Shown here piece by piece: positions 3,567-20,216 of a DNA stretch of 64,000 nt. The DNA comes from Macrostomum lignano (taxonomy: Eukaryota). The position numbers and the translations under genes were made by a program. A model generated the notes under the pieces. That model had not been told where the DNA came from. It worked only from the letters and a program-made list of their open reading frames with translations, and searched no databases. The stretch is from NCBI GenBank assembly GCA_002269645.1, contig NIVC01001346.1, forward strand, positions 62,001-126,000, in the 5' to 3' direction. Position 1 is the stretch's first letter, and every line of letters starts with the position of its first letter.

Positions 3567-3838
3567 TTAAGCGTAGAATTCCCTAGTGGGCGCTTTCTGA
3601 TACTCGCTACTGGCCGGCGCTTTCTTCCCCGGGTCCAGCGAGTAGGAGCCCTCGTCCGCTTTGCGCTTCCGATAGATGCAAAACGCTATCAGAGCTACTA
3701 TAAGTAGGACACCCGCGGTGCCACCGGCAACGATGCCAATTAGGGCCGTCGGCTGCACGAGGGCCGACTCTGAGCTGGCCGGAGCGGCCGAGTTCGTTGT
3801 GCTGTCCGACATGTCCTCTGTGGAAGTGGTTGGGGGAT
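3567..3838 (-). CDS. sdc: Syndecan-like gene exon 5: Ser/Thr stalk, TM helix and syndecan cytoplasmic tail
   Basis: Acceptor ctcctgcag|AT (phase 1). Encodes DPPTTSTEDMSDSTT...LIGIVAGGTAGVLLIVALIAFCIYRKRKADEGSYSL...YQKAPTREFYA*: GxxxG, C1-like RKRKADEGSY and C2 EFYA are syndecan hallmarks. Confidence 0.95.
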
Positions 3839-3949
3839 CTGCAGGAGTGAAGCTCGCAATTTAATACCTTTTTGCAATATACCGACGCTTATCCAGCTCT
3901 GTTTAATTACTGACTCTGGGATAATCTCCTAACAAATCCCACCATTCCT

Positions 3950-4750
3950 ATCTATTCTATCCCATACATTCCTATCTCATCTAATCCCGTCACACACTAT
4001 CATATCCAATACCATACCATCCCATCCTTATCCTATTCAATCCTATTCTATTCCATCCCATCCTATCCCATTCCATCCCATCCCAGCCTATCCCATCCCA
4101 TCCCATCCCATCCCATATCATACCATCCCATCCTATTCCATTCCATTCCCTCCCATCCTATTCCATCCCATCCCATCCCATCCCATCCCATCCTATCTCA
4201 TCCCATCCCATCCCATCCCATCCCATCCCATCCTATCTCATCCCATCCCATCCCATCCCATCCCATCCCATCCCATCCTATTCCATCCCATCCCATCCTA
4301 TCCCATTCCATCCCATCCCAGCCTATCCCATCCCATCCCATCCCATCCCATCCCATATCATACCATCCCATCCTATTCCATTCCATTCCCTCCCATCCTA
4401 TTCCATCCCATCCCATCCCATCCATCCCATCCTATCTCATCCCATCCCATCCCATCCCATCCCATCCCATCCTATTCCATCCCATCCTATCCTATCCCAT
4501 CCCATCCCATCCCATCCTATCCCATCCCATCCTATCCCATCCCATCCCAGCCTATCCCATACCATCCCAGCCTATCCCATCCCATCTCATTTTATCCCAT
4601 CTCAGCCTATCCTATCCTATCCTATCTTATTCCATACTACCCAATCCCACCCCATATCATCTCACCCCATGCCATCTCACCCCATCCCATCCCATCCATA
4701 CTATTCTATCCTATCCCAACCCACCCCATCTCATTCTATTCCGTCCTAAC
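3950..4750. repeat. (CCATC/CTATC)n pentamer microsatellite in syndecan intron 4
   Basis: Direct inspection. Confidence 0.95.
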
Positions 4751-6186
4751 CGATCCCATTTCATCTTCAATTGATAATTTTAATCTATTTAGCACAGGCG
4801 AATCTCACATTCTTACCTCTGTGTCCAGTTGTTGGCTTCTAAAATGGAAAAAGTGGTAAAGAAAATATTAGAAGAATAATCATTCTTGCTAAAGAGGCTT
4901 GTCTTCATGTGCGAGCAACTACGGACGAATAGTTGCACTCAGATCGTGAAGATGAAAGAAGGATCGAGAAGAACGAGAAAGATCTGCCGTAGAGTTGCAG
5001 GGGTAGGGGTTGAGAGGAAGTCGAGAGGGGGGGCAGAGAGGGAGCATGGTAAGGGAAGACGGGGCCGGAGATGTAGATTAAGTGCCGCATAGCTACTGCA
5101 TTGGAATTATCAAAAAGCTACCTAGATTAAGCGCTAGATTAACAGTTGAGATCGAGACATGTGGAAATGGTACTCGCTTTGAGACGCTCTCAAGGGAATT
5201 TGAGCAGCACAAAAGTCAGAGCAAACTGCATGAAGGAAACTCACCAAAAAAAGGGCTTCTTAGACAGCTATGTTTTTACGAGGAAATAAGCAGGTTAAAA
5301 AGCTACAATAAAGTGGATTGATAGGGAATCTATCATTCAGAGCTTGCAGCGGTCCATGAAGGCTTTCATTTTGAGTTTTTTGTAGTCGACTGCTGGCACA
5401 CTCTCTGGTGGTCTGCGTTCAGACACGCGGCAACGGGGGGGGGTCTCAGGCGGCGCTTCCCTAGCTCAGCTGCTCCACCAGCGTCCCGGACCGCCTGCTC
5501 CCCTTTGCTCTGCTCTCTTAAGAGCCCCACCGCCCCATCCCCCTCCCCTCCTCTTCTTTCGGCGTCCCCCCGCCCTCCCCCACCTTGGTTGCCGTCGCCC
5601 AGCCACGGTCCGCCACTTTGCAAACCCGTCGCCTTGCGCGGATTTGGTAGCTGCTTCCCCTGCTGCGCCAAGATGGGAGACTGGGAGGATGAGGGCGCGA
5701 ACGAACACTTGGAGGCAGAGGAAGACTGGATGCTTGTGGGGGGTGGGAGGCGGCTGTGGAGAGCAGGGAAGAGAGGGGGGAAAGAGAGAGGGATAGAGAA
5801 GTGGGAAAAGCGGGCATCAGGCGCTAAACTCGGATCGAGGGGATTGGGATCGGGTGGGGTGGGATTAGCCTGCCTTGGTTTGCCTGCCTGTCTGTCTGCC
5901 GGTCTGTCTGACTTGAAACTTGTTTTTTGGCGGGGCGGCGGCGCGAGAAAGGAAAAGTGATGATGCTCCTTGCCAACATCGCCCCTAGCTCATTCCAGCC
6001 TCATATAACTTTCTCCGTCAGGATTCGCTGTCTCCCTCTCTGCCCCCGTCGCCCAAGAAGTGCAGACAGTGTCCAGCTGAGGCCGCTTCATCTGCCCACC
6101 TTGCCTCTCCGAGGGCGGGGCGGAATGAGACCGAAGGGACAGACGCCAAGGGGGTCGCTTTACAAACTAGAAACTTCACCACCTTG

Positions 6187-6490
6187 AAGCTACACAAACT
6201 AAATAATTTTAGGTTTTTTGTGGATGATAGTTTTCACAAACTAAAGAAGCTTCACAAACTAAATAATTTTAGGTTTTTTGTGGATGATAGTTTTCACAAA
6301 CTAAAAAAGCTTCACAAACTAAAGAAATTTACTTTACAAACTGAATAACCTTCAAAAACTAAATAGTCTTCTCAACTAAATAACCGTAACAAACTAAAGA
6401 AGCTTCACAAACTAAAGAAGCTTCACAAACTAAATAAGCTTCACAAACTAAAGAAGCTTCACAAACTAAAGAAGCTTCACAAAGTAAAGA
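6187..6490. repeat. About 18-bp repeat (GAAGCTTCACAAACTAAA) including a duplicated block of about 63 bp
   Basis: Direct inspection. Confidence 0.85.
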
Positions 6491-7320
6491 AACTGGCTGG
6501 CAGTCCGATGAGGGGAATGGCGAGGTTATAAGAGGATAGCAATATATTCTATGTGTTTTTATTAATAGTCAGATCAAGGACTCCCAAAATAAGTAGCTGG
6601 ATTTTGGAACGAAAAAATAAGCTCTGAATAGAACGGAATTGCATGCTTGTGTTTAAGGTTAGTTTTAAGACTATTTTTTATGAAAAAAAATGAACTAAAA
6701 CCAAAGTGGTGAATTGGCTCTCTCAATGGATTAAATAAGAAGCTTTCTGCTAATTTTTCCGAACTCTGCAATTATCATGTACGAGTACCTAATACCCTCT
6801 CCTCTATCTCTATTCTCTCCCTTTTCCTCTCTCATCTAGCCTTTAAGGTTGAAAGCTTGCGGACATCTACTATAGAAAGAGGTTAAACTCGATCGGCCTT
6901 CTTGTGTCCCAGTCAAAGTGTTACTTTTCGAGGTTCACGAATCAATACGCGGCCGAAATCCTCCTAATTTTCCTTCGTTAATGTTCCGGTTAGCAAGAGC
7001 CTCGGGGGAGGTGGGGTGGGGGATTTCACGCGACACAAACTACAGAATCCAGCGGCTCTGCCTTCCCAATGTTCCGCCCACCGCAAGGCAGCCGCATGGA
7101 ACAAGGAACAAGAACAAACCCAAATGCTGAAAAAGAATAAAAGCATGAGATTTAGGGCTAGCCAGGGCCTGGATTCCATCTGGACAATAAACTTGGCTGT
7201 CCTGTCTGCGAGTTGCATTTTGTGGTTAAGAAAGGTTTTGGGCTTTTACGAAGGCACTTTTCGACTGATGTGTTTGGAGACCTGGGGATAGGCAAAAGGC
7301 TTAAAAATGAATATTTCCCA

Positions 7321-18979: not shown

Positions 18980-19370
18980 CTGTCTGCCTGCTTGTCTGTC
19001 TGTCTGTCTGTCTGTCTGTCTGTCTGCCTGCCTGCCTGTCTGCCTGTCTGTCTGTCTGTCTGTCTGTCTGTCTGTCTGTCTGTCTGTCTGTCTGTCTGTC
19101 TGTCTGTCTGTCTGTCTGTCTGTCTGTCTGTCTGTCTGTCTGTCTGTCTGTCTGTCTGTCTGTCTGTCTGTCTGTCTGTCTGTCTGTCTGTCTGTCTGTC
19201 TGTCTGTCTGTCTGTCTGTCTGTCTGTCTGTCTGTCTGTCTGTCTGTCTGTCTGTCTGTCTGTCTGTCTGTCTGTCTGTCTGTCTGTCTGTCTGTCTGTC
19301 TGTCTGTCTGTCTGTCTGTCTGTCTGTCTGTCTGTCTGTCTGTGTCTGTCTGTCTGTCTGTCTGTCTGTC
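18980..19370. repeat. (GTCT)n / (GACA)n microsatellite
   Basis: Direct inspection. Confidence 0.97.
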
Positions 19371-19396
19371 TTAGTGCCTGTCCCAGAAGAGCTCAC

Positions 19397-19601
19397 AAGT
19401 GCTGCCGTCAGAGTTCCAGTCCGCGGTTGCCGAACGGTCGGTCAGGACGGGCAGGTTCAGCTGTCTCACGCTGGAGTTTTGCTGATTCGGGTCGCCAGAC
19501 TTCTCCGTTGGGCTTCTCTGGCCAGACGCTGCGGAGTCTCCGCTGCCCCAGCCGCTGCCTTCGTCGTCGCCCATCGAGCCAGCGCCGGAGCCGCTGCCGG
19601 T
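19397..19601 (-). CDS. sdc: Syndecan-like gene exon 2: glycosaminoglycan attachment region
   Basis: Acceptor catccag|ACC (phase 0), donor ACTT|gtgagc (phase 1). Encodes TGSGSGAGSMGDDEGSGWGSGDS...: Ser-Gly dipeptides flanked by acidic residues and a Trp. Confidence 0.85.
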
Positions 19602-20123
19602 CTGGATGTCGGTTTTTCATTAGAGCCTTTGGGATAAATTTCTTTCTTTTTAAACTGCTACAACGGTACAGCAACTTTTTGCATTTCTCTTAATAATCTT
19701 GTGTCGATATCAAGGTAAATTTAGTTTTCAAAGCATTTCTTTTACTGCTTTTATCCCAAAAAATCAATGATAAAATTAATTGTTAAATGTCACATTCATT
19801 TTTCTACTAGTACAAACCGCCGTGAGAAACATTTCAGTGAGAAACATTAGTGTCCATTAATACTTAGTAAATAATTACGCAATCAAGTATAGCCATTAAA
19901 GTATTTATGAATCATATAAAATTTACTAGTGAAATTTTTTGTTTTATAAGATTCTTACTTTTATTTGAATTCTAGAAATAATAGGCGCAAAAATAAATTT
20001 ATAGACTTTTGAGTTTAAAAATATAATAATAGTATAATGTATACGACATAAATTAAAATTATCGGAAAACTGTTACTATTTTTTGGCATTTTTCAAATTT
20101 GGTTGTAATATCAAATAACTTAC

Positions 20124-20216
20124 CAATCGTCTATTGTAGAGCGCAGCGGACATTGGCTGACAAATCAGTGCACACGAATATAAAAATACTTGAAATAAAA
20201 CACGCAAGCGGGTCAT
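20124..20216 (-). CDS. sdc: Syndecan-like gene exon 1: signal peptide
   Basis: MTRLRVLFQVFLYSCALICQPMSAALYNRRL followed by a consensus donor TTG|gtaagt (phase 0, matches exon 2). Five exons total 1137 nt = 378 aa plus stop. Confidence 0.85.

What the first reader, a model, noticed from the sequence alone, without database searches (positions are those of the whole stretch)
3567..20216. Syndecan with a folded thyroglobulin-1 + SEA (EpCAM-like) ectodomain
Seen: five phase-compatible exons give a 378-aa protein: signal peptide; acidic Ser-Gly cluster (TGSGSG...DDEGSGWGSGD); 6-Cys TY domain (QC, CFCAD); SEA-like domain; Ser/Thr stalk; GxxxG TM helix; RKRKADEGSY...EFYA tail. Knowledge: canonical syndecan ectodomains are unstructured, whereas a TY domain followed by a SEA-like fold is the core of EpCAM/Trop2. 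Inference: a chimeric heparan-sulfate proteoglycan that joins a possibly adhesive or protease-regulating EpCAM-like module to syndecan/syntenin PDZ signalling. It may bear on the origin of EpCAM-type architecture. The ORF track misses it because 15.5 kb of repeat-filled introns split it.
Basis: partly seen in the sequence, partly recalled or inferred. Interest (0 to 1): 0.85.

Follow-up and report, generated by a model that had tools for sequence, protein, structure and literature searches.

The report
Spiralian-type syndecan with TY and SEA-like domains
This is a real five-exon gene for a syndecan cell-surface proteoglycan whose outer part carries a folded thyroglobulin-type domain and a probable SEA-like domain, but flatworms, molluscs, annelids and nemerteans already have such syndecans in public databases, so it is a new member of a known kind and not a unique chimera.

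Summary
Five minus-strand exons (20216-20124, 19601-19397, 16026-15651, 10385-10195, 3838-3567) join in frame through GT..AG introns. They give 378 aa ending in EFYA.

- **Syndecan:** the Pfam Syndecan domain is unambiguous (57.5 bits, cut-off 25.2).
- **TY domain:** it is real. There are six Cys with QC and CFC motifs, and every phmmer hit is a TY-repeat protein.
- **Post-TY domain:** SEA is its only Pfam match, and that match is below threshold (E=5e-4).
- **Fold:** AlphaFold models of the closest full-length relative, Taenia solium syndecan, show a beta-alpha-beta-beta-alpha-beta domain there. Its best PDB matches are SEA-bearing proteins.

The novelty claim fails. 34 of the 120 syndecan clusters listed carry TY plus Syndecan. 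They come from Schistosoma, molluscs, an annelid and a nemertean. Cestode syndecans show TY plus the same alpha/beta module. SEA domains in echinoderm syndecans are published.

Kinship with EpCAM rests on the TY domain only. The C-domains show no sequence similarity (hhalign E=0.62). The fold match to EpCAM appeared with one model and not with the other.

Verdict: this organism's syndecan orthologue, of the spiralian and probably flatworm type.

The parts
20124..20216 (-). Exon 1: start codon and signal peptide (aa 1-31, MTRLRVLFQVFLYSCALICQPMSAA...). An alternative in-frame ATG lies at 20258.
   Evidence: Donor is gtaagt. The signal peptide is read from the sequence and was not run through a predictor.
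19397..19601 (-). Exon 2: acidic Ser-Gly cluster (aa 32-58, window 19521-19601) with five SG dipeptides, including DDEGSGWGSGD. These are the probable glycosaminoglycan attachment sites. A linker follows.
   Evidence: GC3 of this frame is 0.79. It aligns with the acidic SG clusters of mollusc and annelid syndecans.
15833..16021 (-). Thyroglobulin type-1 (TY) domain, aa 102-164, inside exon 3 (15651-16026). It has six Cys with LQC and CFCAD motifs.
   Evidence: phmmer of exon 3 against 1.84 billion proteins: all 10 hits are TY-repeat proteins, best E=2.4e-27. Pfam Thyroglobulin_1 E=4e-4, 20.2 bits against a cut-off of 20.6. The profile hits thyroglobulin, IGFBP2/4, thyropin, EpCAM and Trop2 in the PDB through TY. 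It is the only TY-like fragment in the window.
15651..15832 (-). First half of the SEA-like domain (aa 165-224; inferred strand 1, helix 1, strand 2), at the 3' end of exon 3.
   Evidence: Pfam SEA matches aa 185-241 to profile positions 16-76 of 106. E=5e-4 and 20.6 bits for the domain alone, below the cut-off of 26.4. Nine shuffles gave no hit. The secondary-structure elements are inferred from the Taenia model.
10195..10385 (-). Exon 4: second half of the SEA-like domain (aa 226-283, window 10211-10384; inferred strand 3, helix 2, strand 4), then the start of the stalk.
   Evidence: GC3 is 0.83, the highest in the gene. The L.S.GH motif is shared with flatworm syndecans.
3567..3838 (-). Exon 5: Ser/Thr-rich stalk, transmembrane helix (aa 320-344, window 3672-3746), C1 RKRKADEGSYS (3639-3671), V region (3582-3638), C2 EFYA (3570-3581), and the stop codon.
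   Evidence: Pfam Syndecan 57.5 bits against a cut-off of 25.2, aa 317-376. 55% identical to cestode syndecan tails. An HMM of other species' tails gives E=8e-21, with one hit in the window.
3839..20123 (-). The span that holds the four introns (522, 3370, 5265 and 6356 nt) and internal exons 2-4. The introns hold 13 tandem-repeat arrays.

Best explanation
The locus encodes this organism's syndecan, a type I single-pass cell-surface proteoglycan of the kind found in Spiralia. Its nearest relatives are flatworm syndecans.

Shown:
- An intact five-exon reading frame.
- A bona fide syndecan transmembrane and cytoplasmic domain (C1 RKRKADEGSY, C2 EFYA).
- A bona fide six-Cys TY domain.
- An acidic SG cluster near the N-terminus.

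Inferred:
- After signal-peptide removal, the membrane-distal SG cluster carries heparan or chondroitin sulfate chains that capture ligands.
- Below it sits a folded module. The TY domain comes first, a fold that in thyropins, testican-1 and EpCAM binds or inhibits papain-like cysteine cathepsins.
- The TY domain runs straight into a roughly 120-aa SEA-like beta-alpha-beta-beta-alpha-beta domain. This domain lacks the G/S-phi-phi-phi self-cleavage motif, so it probably acts as a rigid spacer or as a protease-accessible shedding module.
- A Ser/Thr-rich, probably O-glycosylated stalk leads to a transmembrane helix with a small-residue motif (AGGTAG) that drives dimerisation.
- The tail couples to PDZ scaffolds (syntenin or CASK type) through EFYA, and to the cortical cytoskeleton through C1.
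For: - Gene model.
- Syndecan domain above Pfam's cut-off.
- TY domain.
- Same overall layout in relatives. The best local BLASTP alignments to Taenia solium and Echinococcus syndecans cover 92% and 88% of the TY-to-tail query, at 31% and 28% identity. The cestode and trematode alignment shows TY, then about 120-130 aa, then stalk, TM and tail.
- One short contig (1858 nt) carries the whole 395-aa TY/alpha-beta/syndecan reading frame of P0021. The parts are therefore co-transcribed in a relative.
- TY plus Syndecan occurs in 34 of 120 listed clusters, including Schistosoma, Haliotis, Mizuhopecten, Mya, Paralvinella and Tubulanus. Mollusc forms have an SG cluster plus two TY domains.
- SEA-likeness of the window's own domain: SEA is the only Pfam hit, E=5e-4, and nine shuffles gave nothing.
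- Fold in the Taenia relative: pLDDT 80-90, beta-alpha-beta-beta-alpha-beta. The top Foldseek hits are SEA-bearing proteins: Gpr126, TMPRSS6 and MUC16 SEA.
- Only one TY fragment and one syndecan tail exist in the 64-kb window, on the same strand and in the right order.
- TY domains as cathepsin regulators, modulated by glycosaminoglycans: PMC10889554.
Against: - There is no transcript evidence for the four junctions.
- The exon 3 donor (gttggc) is weak.
- The start codon is ambiguous.
- Both folded-domain Pfam matches are below the curated cut-offs.
- The window's post-TY domain does not score above shuffles against an HMM of the flatworm domains (1.9 bits; shuffles reach 5.1). It shows nothing against brittle-star syndecan SEA (E=0.057 and 0.24) or PDB sequences.
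- Transferring the Taenia fold to this protein therefore rests on position, length and a few shared residues.
- The window protein itself could not be folded, because the tool refuses spliced sequences.
- Intron positions differ from the Taenia gene.
- Glycosaminoglycan attachment, protease binding and dimerisation are inferences.
Confidence: 0.85

Rival explanations
1. The TY/SEA-like/TM cassette shares descent with the TY-CD-TM core of EpCAM/Trop2. On this view the gene is a relative of the EpCAM family that carries a syndecan tail, and it is informative about the origin of EpCAM.
For: - The domain order is the same, with the last TY cysteine running straight into the first strand of the next domain.
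- EpCAM's CD is classed as a SEA domain (PMC7349879).
- Foldseek with the full-length Taenia model ranks EpCAM 4mzv first (E=1e-3, 202 aligned columns).
Against: - hhalign to EpCAM aligns only the TY domain and one strand (probability 79%).
- C-domain profile against EpCAM plus Trop2 CD gives E=0.62.
- Among solved TY domains, thyroglobulin, IGFBP2 and a thyropin score above EpCAM.
- EpCAM is absent from the top 50 with the trimmed, better model.
- The TM-scores of the EpCAM match are low (0.17 and 0.26).
- There is no EpCAM N-domain and no EpCAM tail.
- TY and SEA are both common, mobile extracellular modules, so independent assembly is the simpler reading.
Confidence: 0.1
2. The region between the TY domain and the stalk (aa 165-283) is not a SEA domain. 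It would be some other small alpha/beta fold or a lineage-specific linker, and the sub-threshold Pfam match would be fortuitous.
For: - The SEA score is below Pfam's cut-off (20.6 against 26.4).
- There is no significant match to brittle-star syndecan SEA, to flatworm C-domains, or to any PDB sequence.
- Many Foldseek hits of the Taenia model are generic ferredoxin-like folds: ribosomal protein S6, NikR, and the dimerisation domains of beta-alanine synthase and related amidohydrolases.
- There is no G/S-phi-phi-phi motif.
Against: - SEA is the only Pfam family matched, with a library-wide E=5e-4, while nine shuffles matched nothing.
- The match covers helix 1, strand 2 and strand 3 in register.
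- The position just outside the membrane of a proteoglycan is typical SEA context, and echinoderm syndecans have a canonical SEA there.
- The five best Foldseek hits of the trimmed relative model are all SEA-bearing proteins.
Confidence: 0.2
3. The TY/SEA-like exons and the EFYA exon belong to two different genes, or the locus is an unexpressed pseudogene.
For: - No transcript data are available.
- 6.4 kb of repeat-rich intron separate exon 4 from exon 5.
- The exon 3 donor is weak.
Against: - The frame is open and the phases are compatible across all four junctions.
- Relatives carry the same parts in one protein, in one case on a single short contig.
- There is no other syndecan tail or TY exon within 64 kb.
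- GC3 is elevated in exactly these frames.
- There are no frameshifts or internal stops.
Confidence: 0.04

Closest known systems
Neodermatan flatworm syndecans (Taenia solium TsM_000684400 = P0014, Echinococcus multilocularis 'syndecan' P0015, Hymenolepis P0013, Anoplocephala P0001, Schistosoma P0018-P0020)
   Same: - Signal peptide, one TY domain with CFC in place of CWC, a domain of about 120-130 aa directly after the last TY cysteine, then stalk, TM, and a tail from R.RK.DEGSY to EFYA.
- Shared residues in the C-domain (G.Q and L.S.GH).
- The best local alignments cover 88-92% of the TY-to-tail query at 28-31% identity.
   Different: - They lack the N-terminal acidic SG cluster, which aligns to gaps.
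- They have a conserved DPPQQDYPG juxtamembrane motif that is absent here.
- Their C-domain is not recognised by Pfam SEA.
- Their C-domain HMM does not score the window's domain above shuffles.
- Intron positions differ.
Mollusc, annelid and nemertean TY-syndecans (Haliotis 'syndecan-like' P0036, Mizuhopecten P0043, Mya 'SDC-like' P0059, Paralvinella P0047, Tubulanus P0046)
   Same: - N-terminal acidic SG cluster, then a six-Cys TY domain, then stalk, TM and a tail ending in EFYA.
- The tail end YQKAPTREFYA is identical in Tubulanus.
   Different: - Molluscs carry two TY domains in tandem and no SEA-like domain.
- The annelid and the nemertean have one TY domain and no SEA-like domain.
- Their TY domains keep CWCV.
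Echinoderm SEA-syndecans (Ophiomastix 'Syndecan and SEA domain protein' P0114, Amphiura P0108 and P0112; holothurians in PMC10381214)
   Same: Syndecan with a folded SEA domain between the SG region and the membrane.
   Different: - They have no TY domain.
- Their SEA domain is canonical, above Pfam's cut-off, and keeps a GSIIT motif.
- They show no significant sequence similarity to the window's domain.
EpCAM / Trop2 (GA733 family; PDB 4mzv, 7pee)
   Same: A type I membrane protein with a type-1A TY domain followed directly by a Cys-free SEA-type alpha/beta domain and then the TM helix. Neither has a self-cleavage motif (PMC7349879).
   Different: - EpCAM has an extra Cys-rich N-domain, no glycosaminoglycan sites and an unrelated tail.
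- There is no sequence similarity outside the TY domain.
- The fold match is inconsistent between the two models.
Testican/SPOCK
   Same: A proteoglycan core protein that carries a TY domain. The TY domain of testican-1 inhibits cathepsin L and is also cleaved by it (cited in PMC10889554).
   Different: Testican is secreted, not membrane-bound. It has follistatin-like and calcium-binding (EF-hand) domains, and its glycosaminoglycan sites are C-terminal. These differences rest on established knowledge and were not tested here.
Canonical syndecans (vertebrate SDC1-4, Drosophila Sdc, C. elegans SDN-1)
   Same: Pfam Syndecan domain, C1/V/C2 tail, small-residue TM motif and distal SG sites. By my own knowledge (not checked here), vertebrate syndecan genes also have five exons with the signal peptide in exon 1 and the TM and tail in the last exon.
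   Different: No folded Pfam ectodomain domain is recorded for the vertebrate, Drosophila or nematode syndecans listed. The reviews treat the ectodomain only as a glycosaminoglycan carrier (PMC8061687, PMC1464127).

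Membership tests
Syndecan (PF01034) | Pfam Syndecan domain above the gathering score | tested here: met
   57.5 bits against a cut-off of 25.2, aa 317-376, E=1.3e-15.
Syndecan (PF01034) | Conserved C1 (R-x-x-K-K-D-E-G-S-Y) and C2 (EFYA, PDZ-binding C-terminus) motifs | tested here: met
   RKRKADEGSY, with one K replaced by A, and a terminal EFYA. 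Both align to the invariant columns of 13 other syndecans.
Syndecan (PF01034) | Single TM helix with a small-residue (GxxxG-type) dimerisation motif | tested here: met
   ALIGIVAGGTAGVLLIVALIAFCIY. G327 is invariant in alignment A3. Dimerisation itself was not tested.
Syndecan (PF01034) | Ser-Gly glycosaminoglycan attachment sites in an acidic context on the ectodomain | tested here: met
   Five SG dipeptides at aa 32-58, including DDEGSGWGSGD. They align with the SG clusters of mollusc syndecans.
Syndecan (PF01034) | Actual substitution with heparan or chondroitin sulfate | not testable with these tools
   This needs a heparitinase or chondroitinase gel shift of the expressed protein.
Thyroglobulin type-1 repeat (PF00086) | Pfam gathering score | tested here: inconclusive
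   20.2 bits against a cut-off of 20.6 (E=4e-4) on the ectodomain. There was no hit when the whole protein was scanned.
Thyroglobulin type-1 repeat (PF00086) | Six Cys with type-1A spacing, a QC motif and a C-(W/F/Y)-C-(V/A) motif | tested here: met
   Cys at 102, 121, 134, 139, 141 and 164, with LQC and CFCAD. All six columns are invariant in A3.
Thyroglobulin type-1 repeat (PF00086) | Significant sequence similarity to known TY repeats | tested here: met
   All 10 phmmer hits are TY-repeat proteins, best E=2.4e-27. The profile hits thyroglobulin (E=9.6e-5), IGFBP2, thyropin, EpCAM and Trop2.
SEA domain (PF01390) | Pfam gathering score | tested here: not met
   17.8-20.6 bits against a cut-off of 26.4. 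SEA is nevertheless the only family matched (E=5e-4), and nine shuffles gave no hits.
SEA domain (PF01390) | Beta-alpha-beta-beta-alpha-beta fold that superposes on solved SEA domains | tested here: inconclusive
   Tested only on the Taenia relative. It has the right topology at pLDDT 80-90. The top five Foldseek hits are SEA-bearing proteins, but E is 5e-4 to 1e-2 and TM is 0.4-0.54. The window protein could not be submitted.
SEA domain (PF01390) | G/S-phi-phi-phi autoproteolysis motif between strands 2 and 3 (present in only some SEA domains) | tested here: not met
   The sequence there is VVSFSTRQALTVTV, with no G-S. Brittle-star syndecan SEA has GSIIT.
EpCAM/Trop2 (GA733) | Cys-rich N-domain before the TY domain | tested here: not met
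EpCAM/Trop2 (GA733) | Sequence similarity of the C-domain to EpCAM/Trop2 CD | tested here: not met
   hhalign E=0.62. The alignment to full EpCAM stops after the first strand. The query sequences were verified against 4mzv and 7e5n.
EpCAM/Trop2 (GA733) | Two-domain TY+CD fold match | tested here: inconclusive
   4mzv is the top hit with the full model (E=1e-3; TM 0.17 and 0.26). It is absent from the top 50 with the trimmed model.
EpCAM/Trop2 (GA733) | EpCAM-type cytoplasmic tail | tested here: not met
   The tail is a syndecan tail.

The most novel reading that the evidence does not exclude
The TY/SEA/TM cassette of flatworm-type syndecans and that of vertebrate EpCAM/Trop2 derive from one ancestral cassette. 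EpCAM would then have arisen from a syndecan-like proteoglycan, or from a shared precursor, by loss of the glycosaminoglycan region and replacement of the tail. More modestly, folded TY and/or SEA modules were ancestral in bilaterian syndecans and were lost in ecdysozoans and vertebrates. That would overturn the view of the syndecan ectodomain as primitively unstructured.
Probability: 0.1. Interest if true: 0.7.

Novelty: new member of a known kind. Interest (0 to 1): 0.35.

Why it matters
For this genome, the result is a correct annotation of a gene that ORF-based tracks miss.

More generally, it points to a fact that sits in databases but that I could not find discussed in the open literature searched. 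Spiralian syndecans routinely carry folded ectodomain modules: one or two TY domains, and in flatworm-type proteins a SEA-like domain as well.

Reviews built on vertebrates, flies and nematodes treat the ectodomain only as a glycosaminoglycan carrier. A TY domain next to heparan sulfate chains suggests a membrane-anchored regulator of cysteine cathepsins that the chains could modulate. This is testable, and it is relevant to parasitic flatworms, which rely heavily on cathepsins.

The gene does not by itself open the question of EpCAM's origin.

Tried and rejected
- **Submitting the spliced protein.** I used exon 3 alone and the Taenia relative instead.
- **Word-indexed search with exon 3.** It found nothing.
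- **Search with the whole protein.** It was swamped by low-complexity words and returned only two hits.
- **Sequence tests linking the window's post-TY domain to other domains, all non-significant:**
  - HMM of flatworm C-domains: 1.9 bits, inside the shuffle range.
  - hhalign to brittle-star syndecan SEA: E=0.24 and 0.057.
  - hhalign to EpCAM/Trop2 CD: E=0.62.
  - hmmsearch and phmmer against PDB sequences: nothing relevant.
- **Intron-position conservation with the Taenia solium gene.** Positions are not conserved, so this gives no independent support for the splice model.
- **Look-up of the nemertean gene.** It is not on record.
- **Rfam and tRNA scans of the window, done to place the organism.** Both were empty. 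The source organism stays unidentified. Affinity to flatworms is inferred from the shared CFC motif, the shared post-TY domain, and cestode syndecans giving the longest alignments.
- **Second TY exon as in molluscs, or a second syndecan gene.** Rejected, because only one fragment of each kind exists in the window.
- **Further coding exons hidden in the introns.** No other non-repeat minus-strand frame has comparable GC3 without the other frames also being open.

Full report
**1. The observation**

I read the four claimed regions on the minus strand and assembled the five exons.
- The exons are 20216-20124, 19601-19397, 16026-15651, 10385-10195 and 3838-3567. They are 93, 205, 376, 191 and 272 nt long.
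- Every intron starts with GT and ends with AG.
- Donors are gtaagt, gtgagc, gttggc (weak) and gtgagt. All acceptors are cag.
- Exons 2-5 have 60-67% GC, and overall GC3 is 0.73. The frames used have the highest GC3 of any non-repeat minus-strand open frame across the gene (0.79, 0.67, 0.83 and 0.67).
- The introns total 15,513 nt and contain 13 tandem-repeat arrays, so 'repeat-filled introns' is accurate.
The start is therefore ambiguous. Either way a hydrophobic signal-like segment follows.

**2. The domains**

*Syndecan.* Pfam Syndecan is unambiguous at 57.5 bits against a cut-off of 25.2, covering aa 317-376.

*TY domain.* Pfam did not report Thyroglobulin_1 on the whole protein. On the ectodomain alone it scores 20.2 bits against a cut-off of 20.6 (E=4e-4). 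The domain is nevertheless real.
- A filter-free phmmer of exon 3 against 1.84 billion representative proteins returned ten hits. The four I read are TY-repeat proteins with the QC...C(W/F)C(V/A)D..TG signature (best E=2.4e-27), and the other six match the same stretch of the query in several copies.
- A profile of the module hits thyroglobulin, IGFBP2/4, a thyropin, EpCAM and Trop2 in the PDB, always through TY.
- The six cysteines (102, 121, 134, 139, 141, 164) have type-1A spacing.

*Post-TY domain (aa 165-283).* It matches only Pfam SEA, at 17.8-20.6 bits depending on how much flanking sequence is given. That is below the cut-off of 26.4, but the library-wide E-value is 5e-4. Nine shuffles of the same residues matched nothing at E up to 1.

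**3. Relatives**

A profile search with the TY-to-tail part returned 203 proteins, of which 120 are listed.
- The top hits are cestode syndecans (Anoplocephala, Hymenolepis, Taenia solium, Echinococcus multilocularis, Mesocestoides) and Schistosoma proteins.
- The best local BLASTP alignments to the Taenia and Echinococcus proteins cover 92% and 88% of the query, at 31% and 28% identity.
- 34 of the 120 listed clusters carry PF00086 plus PF01034. They include Schistosoma, Haliotis ('syndecan-like'), Mizuhopecten, Ylistrum, Mya ('SDC-like protein'), the annelid Paralvinella, the nemertean Tubulanus, and many transcript-sized contigs.
- Three brittle-star proteins carry PF01390 (SEA) plus PF01034. 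One is named 'Syndecan and SEA domain protein'.

Alignments show the following.
- Mollusc syndecans are an acidic SG cluster plus two TY domains.
- The annelid and nemertean proteins have an SG cluster plus one TY domain.
- Cestode and trematode proteins have one TY domain (with CFC, as here) followed directly by a conserved domain of about 125 aa, with no N-terminal SG cluster.

The window protein combines the SG cluster of the first groups with the TY-plus-domain layout of the flatworms. P0021, a trematode-like protein of 395 aa with TY, domain and tail, sits on a single 1858-nt contig. In a relative, therefore, these parts are one transcript.

Within the window, an HMM of other species' TY domains and an HMM of their tails each find exactly one fragment, on the same strand and in the right order. 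This argues strongly against the 'two genes' alternative.

**4. The fold of the post-TY domain**

The tools refuse spliced sequences, so I modelled the closest full-length relative.
- Taenia solium syndecan was modelled with an 11-row alignment that included the window's exon 3 and 4 translations. It gave pLDDT 80-90 over TY and a beta-alpha-beta-beta-alpha-beta domain.
- A trimmed 194-aa TY-plus-domain model gave mean pLDDT 72 and pTM 0.67 with the same topology.
- Foldseek against the PDB with the trimmed model ranked, in order, Gpr126/ADGRG6, TMPRSS6 and MUC16 SEA (1ivz, then two chains of 7sa9). All are SEA-bearing proteins. E-values were 5e-4 to 1e-2 and TM-scores up to 0.54 on the target.
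- Below those come generic ferredoxin-like folds.
- With the full-length model the first hit was EpCAM 4mzv (E=1e-3, 202 columns, TM 0.17 and 0.26), followed by beta-alanine synthase, Gpr126 and, further down, MUC16 SEA.

The fold is thus SEA-like in the relative.

*Caveat.* The window's domain and the flatworm domains share position, length and a few residues (G.Q, L.S.GH). However, an HMM of the flatworm domains scores the window's domain at 1.9 bits, inside the range of 2000 shuffles. The SEA-like reading for the window therefore rests on two independent weak lines, its own Pfam match and the relative's fold. I put it at about 0.75-0.8. The self-cleavage motif G/S-phi-phi-phi is absent (VVSFSTRQALTV). 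Brittle-star syndecan SEA has GSIIT.

**5. EpCAM**

EpCAM's C-domain is classed as a SEA domain and follows a type-1A TY domain (PMC7349879). The architectural resemblance is therefore real.

I checked my recalled EpCAM and Trop2 sequences against 4mzv, 6i07 and 7e5n and used them in the tests below.
- hhalign of the window-plus-flatworm module to EpCAM aligns only TY and the first strand (probability 79%).
- The C-domain profile against EpCAM plus Trop2 CD gives E=0.62.
- EpCAM's TY is not the closest solved TY.
- The Foldseek EpCAM hit did not reproduce with the better model.
- There is no EpCAM N-domain and no EpCAM tail.

Shared descent of the cassette is not excluded, but nothing beyond the ubiquitous TY domain supports it. 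I put it at about 0.1.

**6. How it most likely works**

*Shown:*
- An intact syndecan tail with C1 and C2.
- A TM helix with a small-residue motif.
- A TY domain.
- An acidic SG cluster containing DDEGSGWGSGD.

*From my own knowledge of heparan sulfate attachment determinants:* repeated SG, flanking acidic residues and a nearby Trp favour heparan sulfate.

*Inferred mechanism:*
- It is a type I proteoglycan with distal glycosaminoglycan chains acting as a co-receptor.
- The folded TY/SEA-like module holds the chains away from the membrane.
- The TY domain may bind or inhibit papain-like cathepsins. Thyropins, testican-1 and EpCAM do this, and glycosaminoglycans modulate one such inhibitor (PMC10889554).
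- The SEA-like domain does not self-cleave.
- The tail signals through PDZ and cytoskeletal partners, as in other syndecans (PMC8061687).

**7. Novelty**

- TY plus Syndecan is widespread in Spiralia in the databases.
- SEA in echinoderm syndecans is published (PMC10381214).

In the paper library, four searches found no discussion of TY domains in syndecans. The 2006 comparative-genomics paper and the 2021 review do not mention folded ectodomains. The general point may therefore be under-appreciated.

This locus is a new member of an existing, database-visible subtype. Its modest distinction is that it combines the SG cluster with the flatworm-type TY-plus-domain layout, and that its domain is the one member of the nine tested that Pfam SEA detects (1 of 9).

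**8. Surroundings**

Rfam and tRNA scans of the window are empty. The rest of the window is very rich in minisatellites. Other likely coding pieces are listed under things noticed in passing. The source organism could not be identified with the tools. Affinity to Platyhelminthes is an inference.

Noticed in passing
The protein may be 392 aa instead of 378.
   Followed up: partly
window 2669-3471; 18980-19371; 13 arrays between 4004 and 19371: Minisatellites are extremely dense. A 24-bp unit repeated 33.6 times starts about 96 nt after the stop codon. A CTGT/GACA array of about 98 copies lies 25 nt downstream of the exon 2 donor. Units of 5, 8, 16, 18, 21, 22, 28, 34, 41, 52 and 60 bp fill the introns. 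The rest of the window looks the same in the ORF list.
   Followed up: partly
window 50800-51912 (-) and 46754-46957 (-): A GC-rich 370-aa open frame ends in a P-loop-like VMGAPRVGKTTMCEQF. A downstream fragment reads KFVTVLLDSEEYHMTFLDTERADD. Together they look like the first exons of a small-GTPase-like gene with a long low-complexity N-terminus and a degenerate DTAGQE motif. Pfam gave no hit for the first exon alone.
   Followed up: partly
window 26821-27543 (+); 36799-37398 (+); 32323-33707 (+): There are further GC-rich, non-repeat open frames: a Q-rich 240-aa ORF, a 199-aa ORF with a Cys-rich start (CSGDCPLKRAPNKICLHCRQPMCLDGAC), and others. None has a Pfam match. They are possibly exons of unannotated genes.
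   Followed up: partly
L001 (Taenia solium MIEF01000614.1), gene at 3001-22637: The Taenia syndecan gene spans 19.6 kb. The SEA-like domain is encoded by a single exon (aa 149-276), and the TY-bearing part by the preceding exon (aa 34-149). In the window gene, by contrast, TY and half of the next domain share one exon.
   Followed up: yes
proteins P0014, P0015, P0001, P0013, P0018-P0021 (alignment A2): Parasitic flatworm syndecans lack the N-terminal acidic Ser-Gly cluster that the window protein and the mollusc and annelid syndecans have. This raises the question of where, or whether, they carry glycosaminoglycan chains. They share a conserved DPPQQDYPG juxtamembrane motif.
   Followed up: no
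protein P0040 (Logan contig); proteins P0108, P0112, P0114: One mollusc-type syndecan has an extra PF07699 Cys-rich module before its TY domains. Brittle-star syndecans carry a canonical SEA domain with a GSIIT motif, so they may self-cleave.
   Followed up: no
window protein aa 308-364 against PDB 8g7y chain C: The TM and juxtamembrane tail also gives a weak match to neurexin-1 (E=0.016, shared DEGSY). This fits the known band-4.1-binding motif shared by syndecan and neurexin tails. Mesocestoides P0017 is named '4.1m domain-containing protein'.
   Followed up: no
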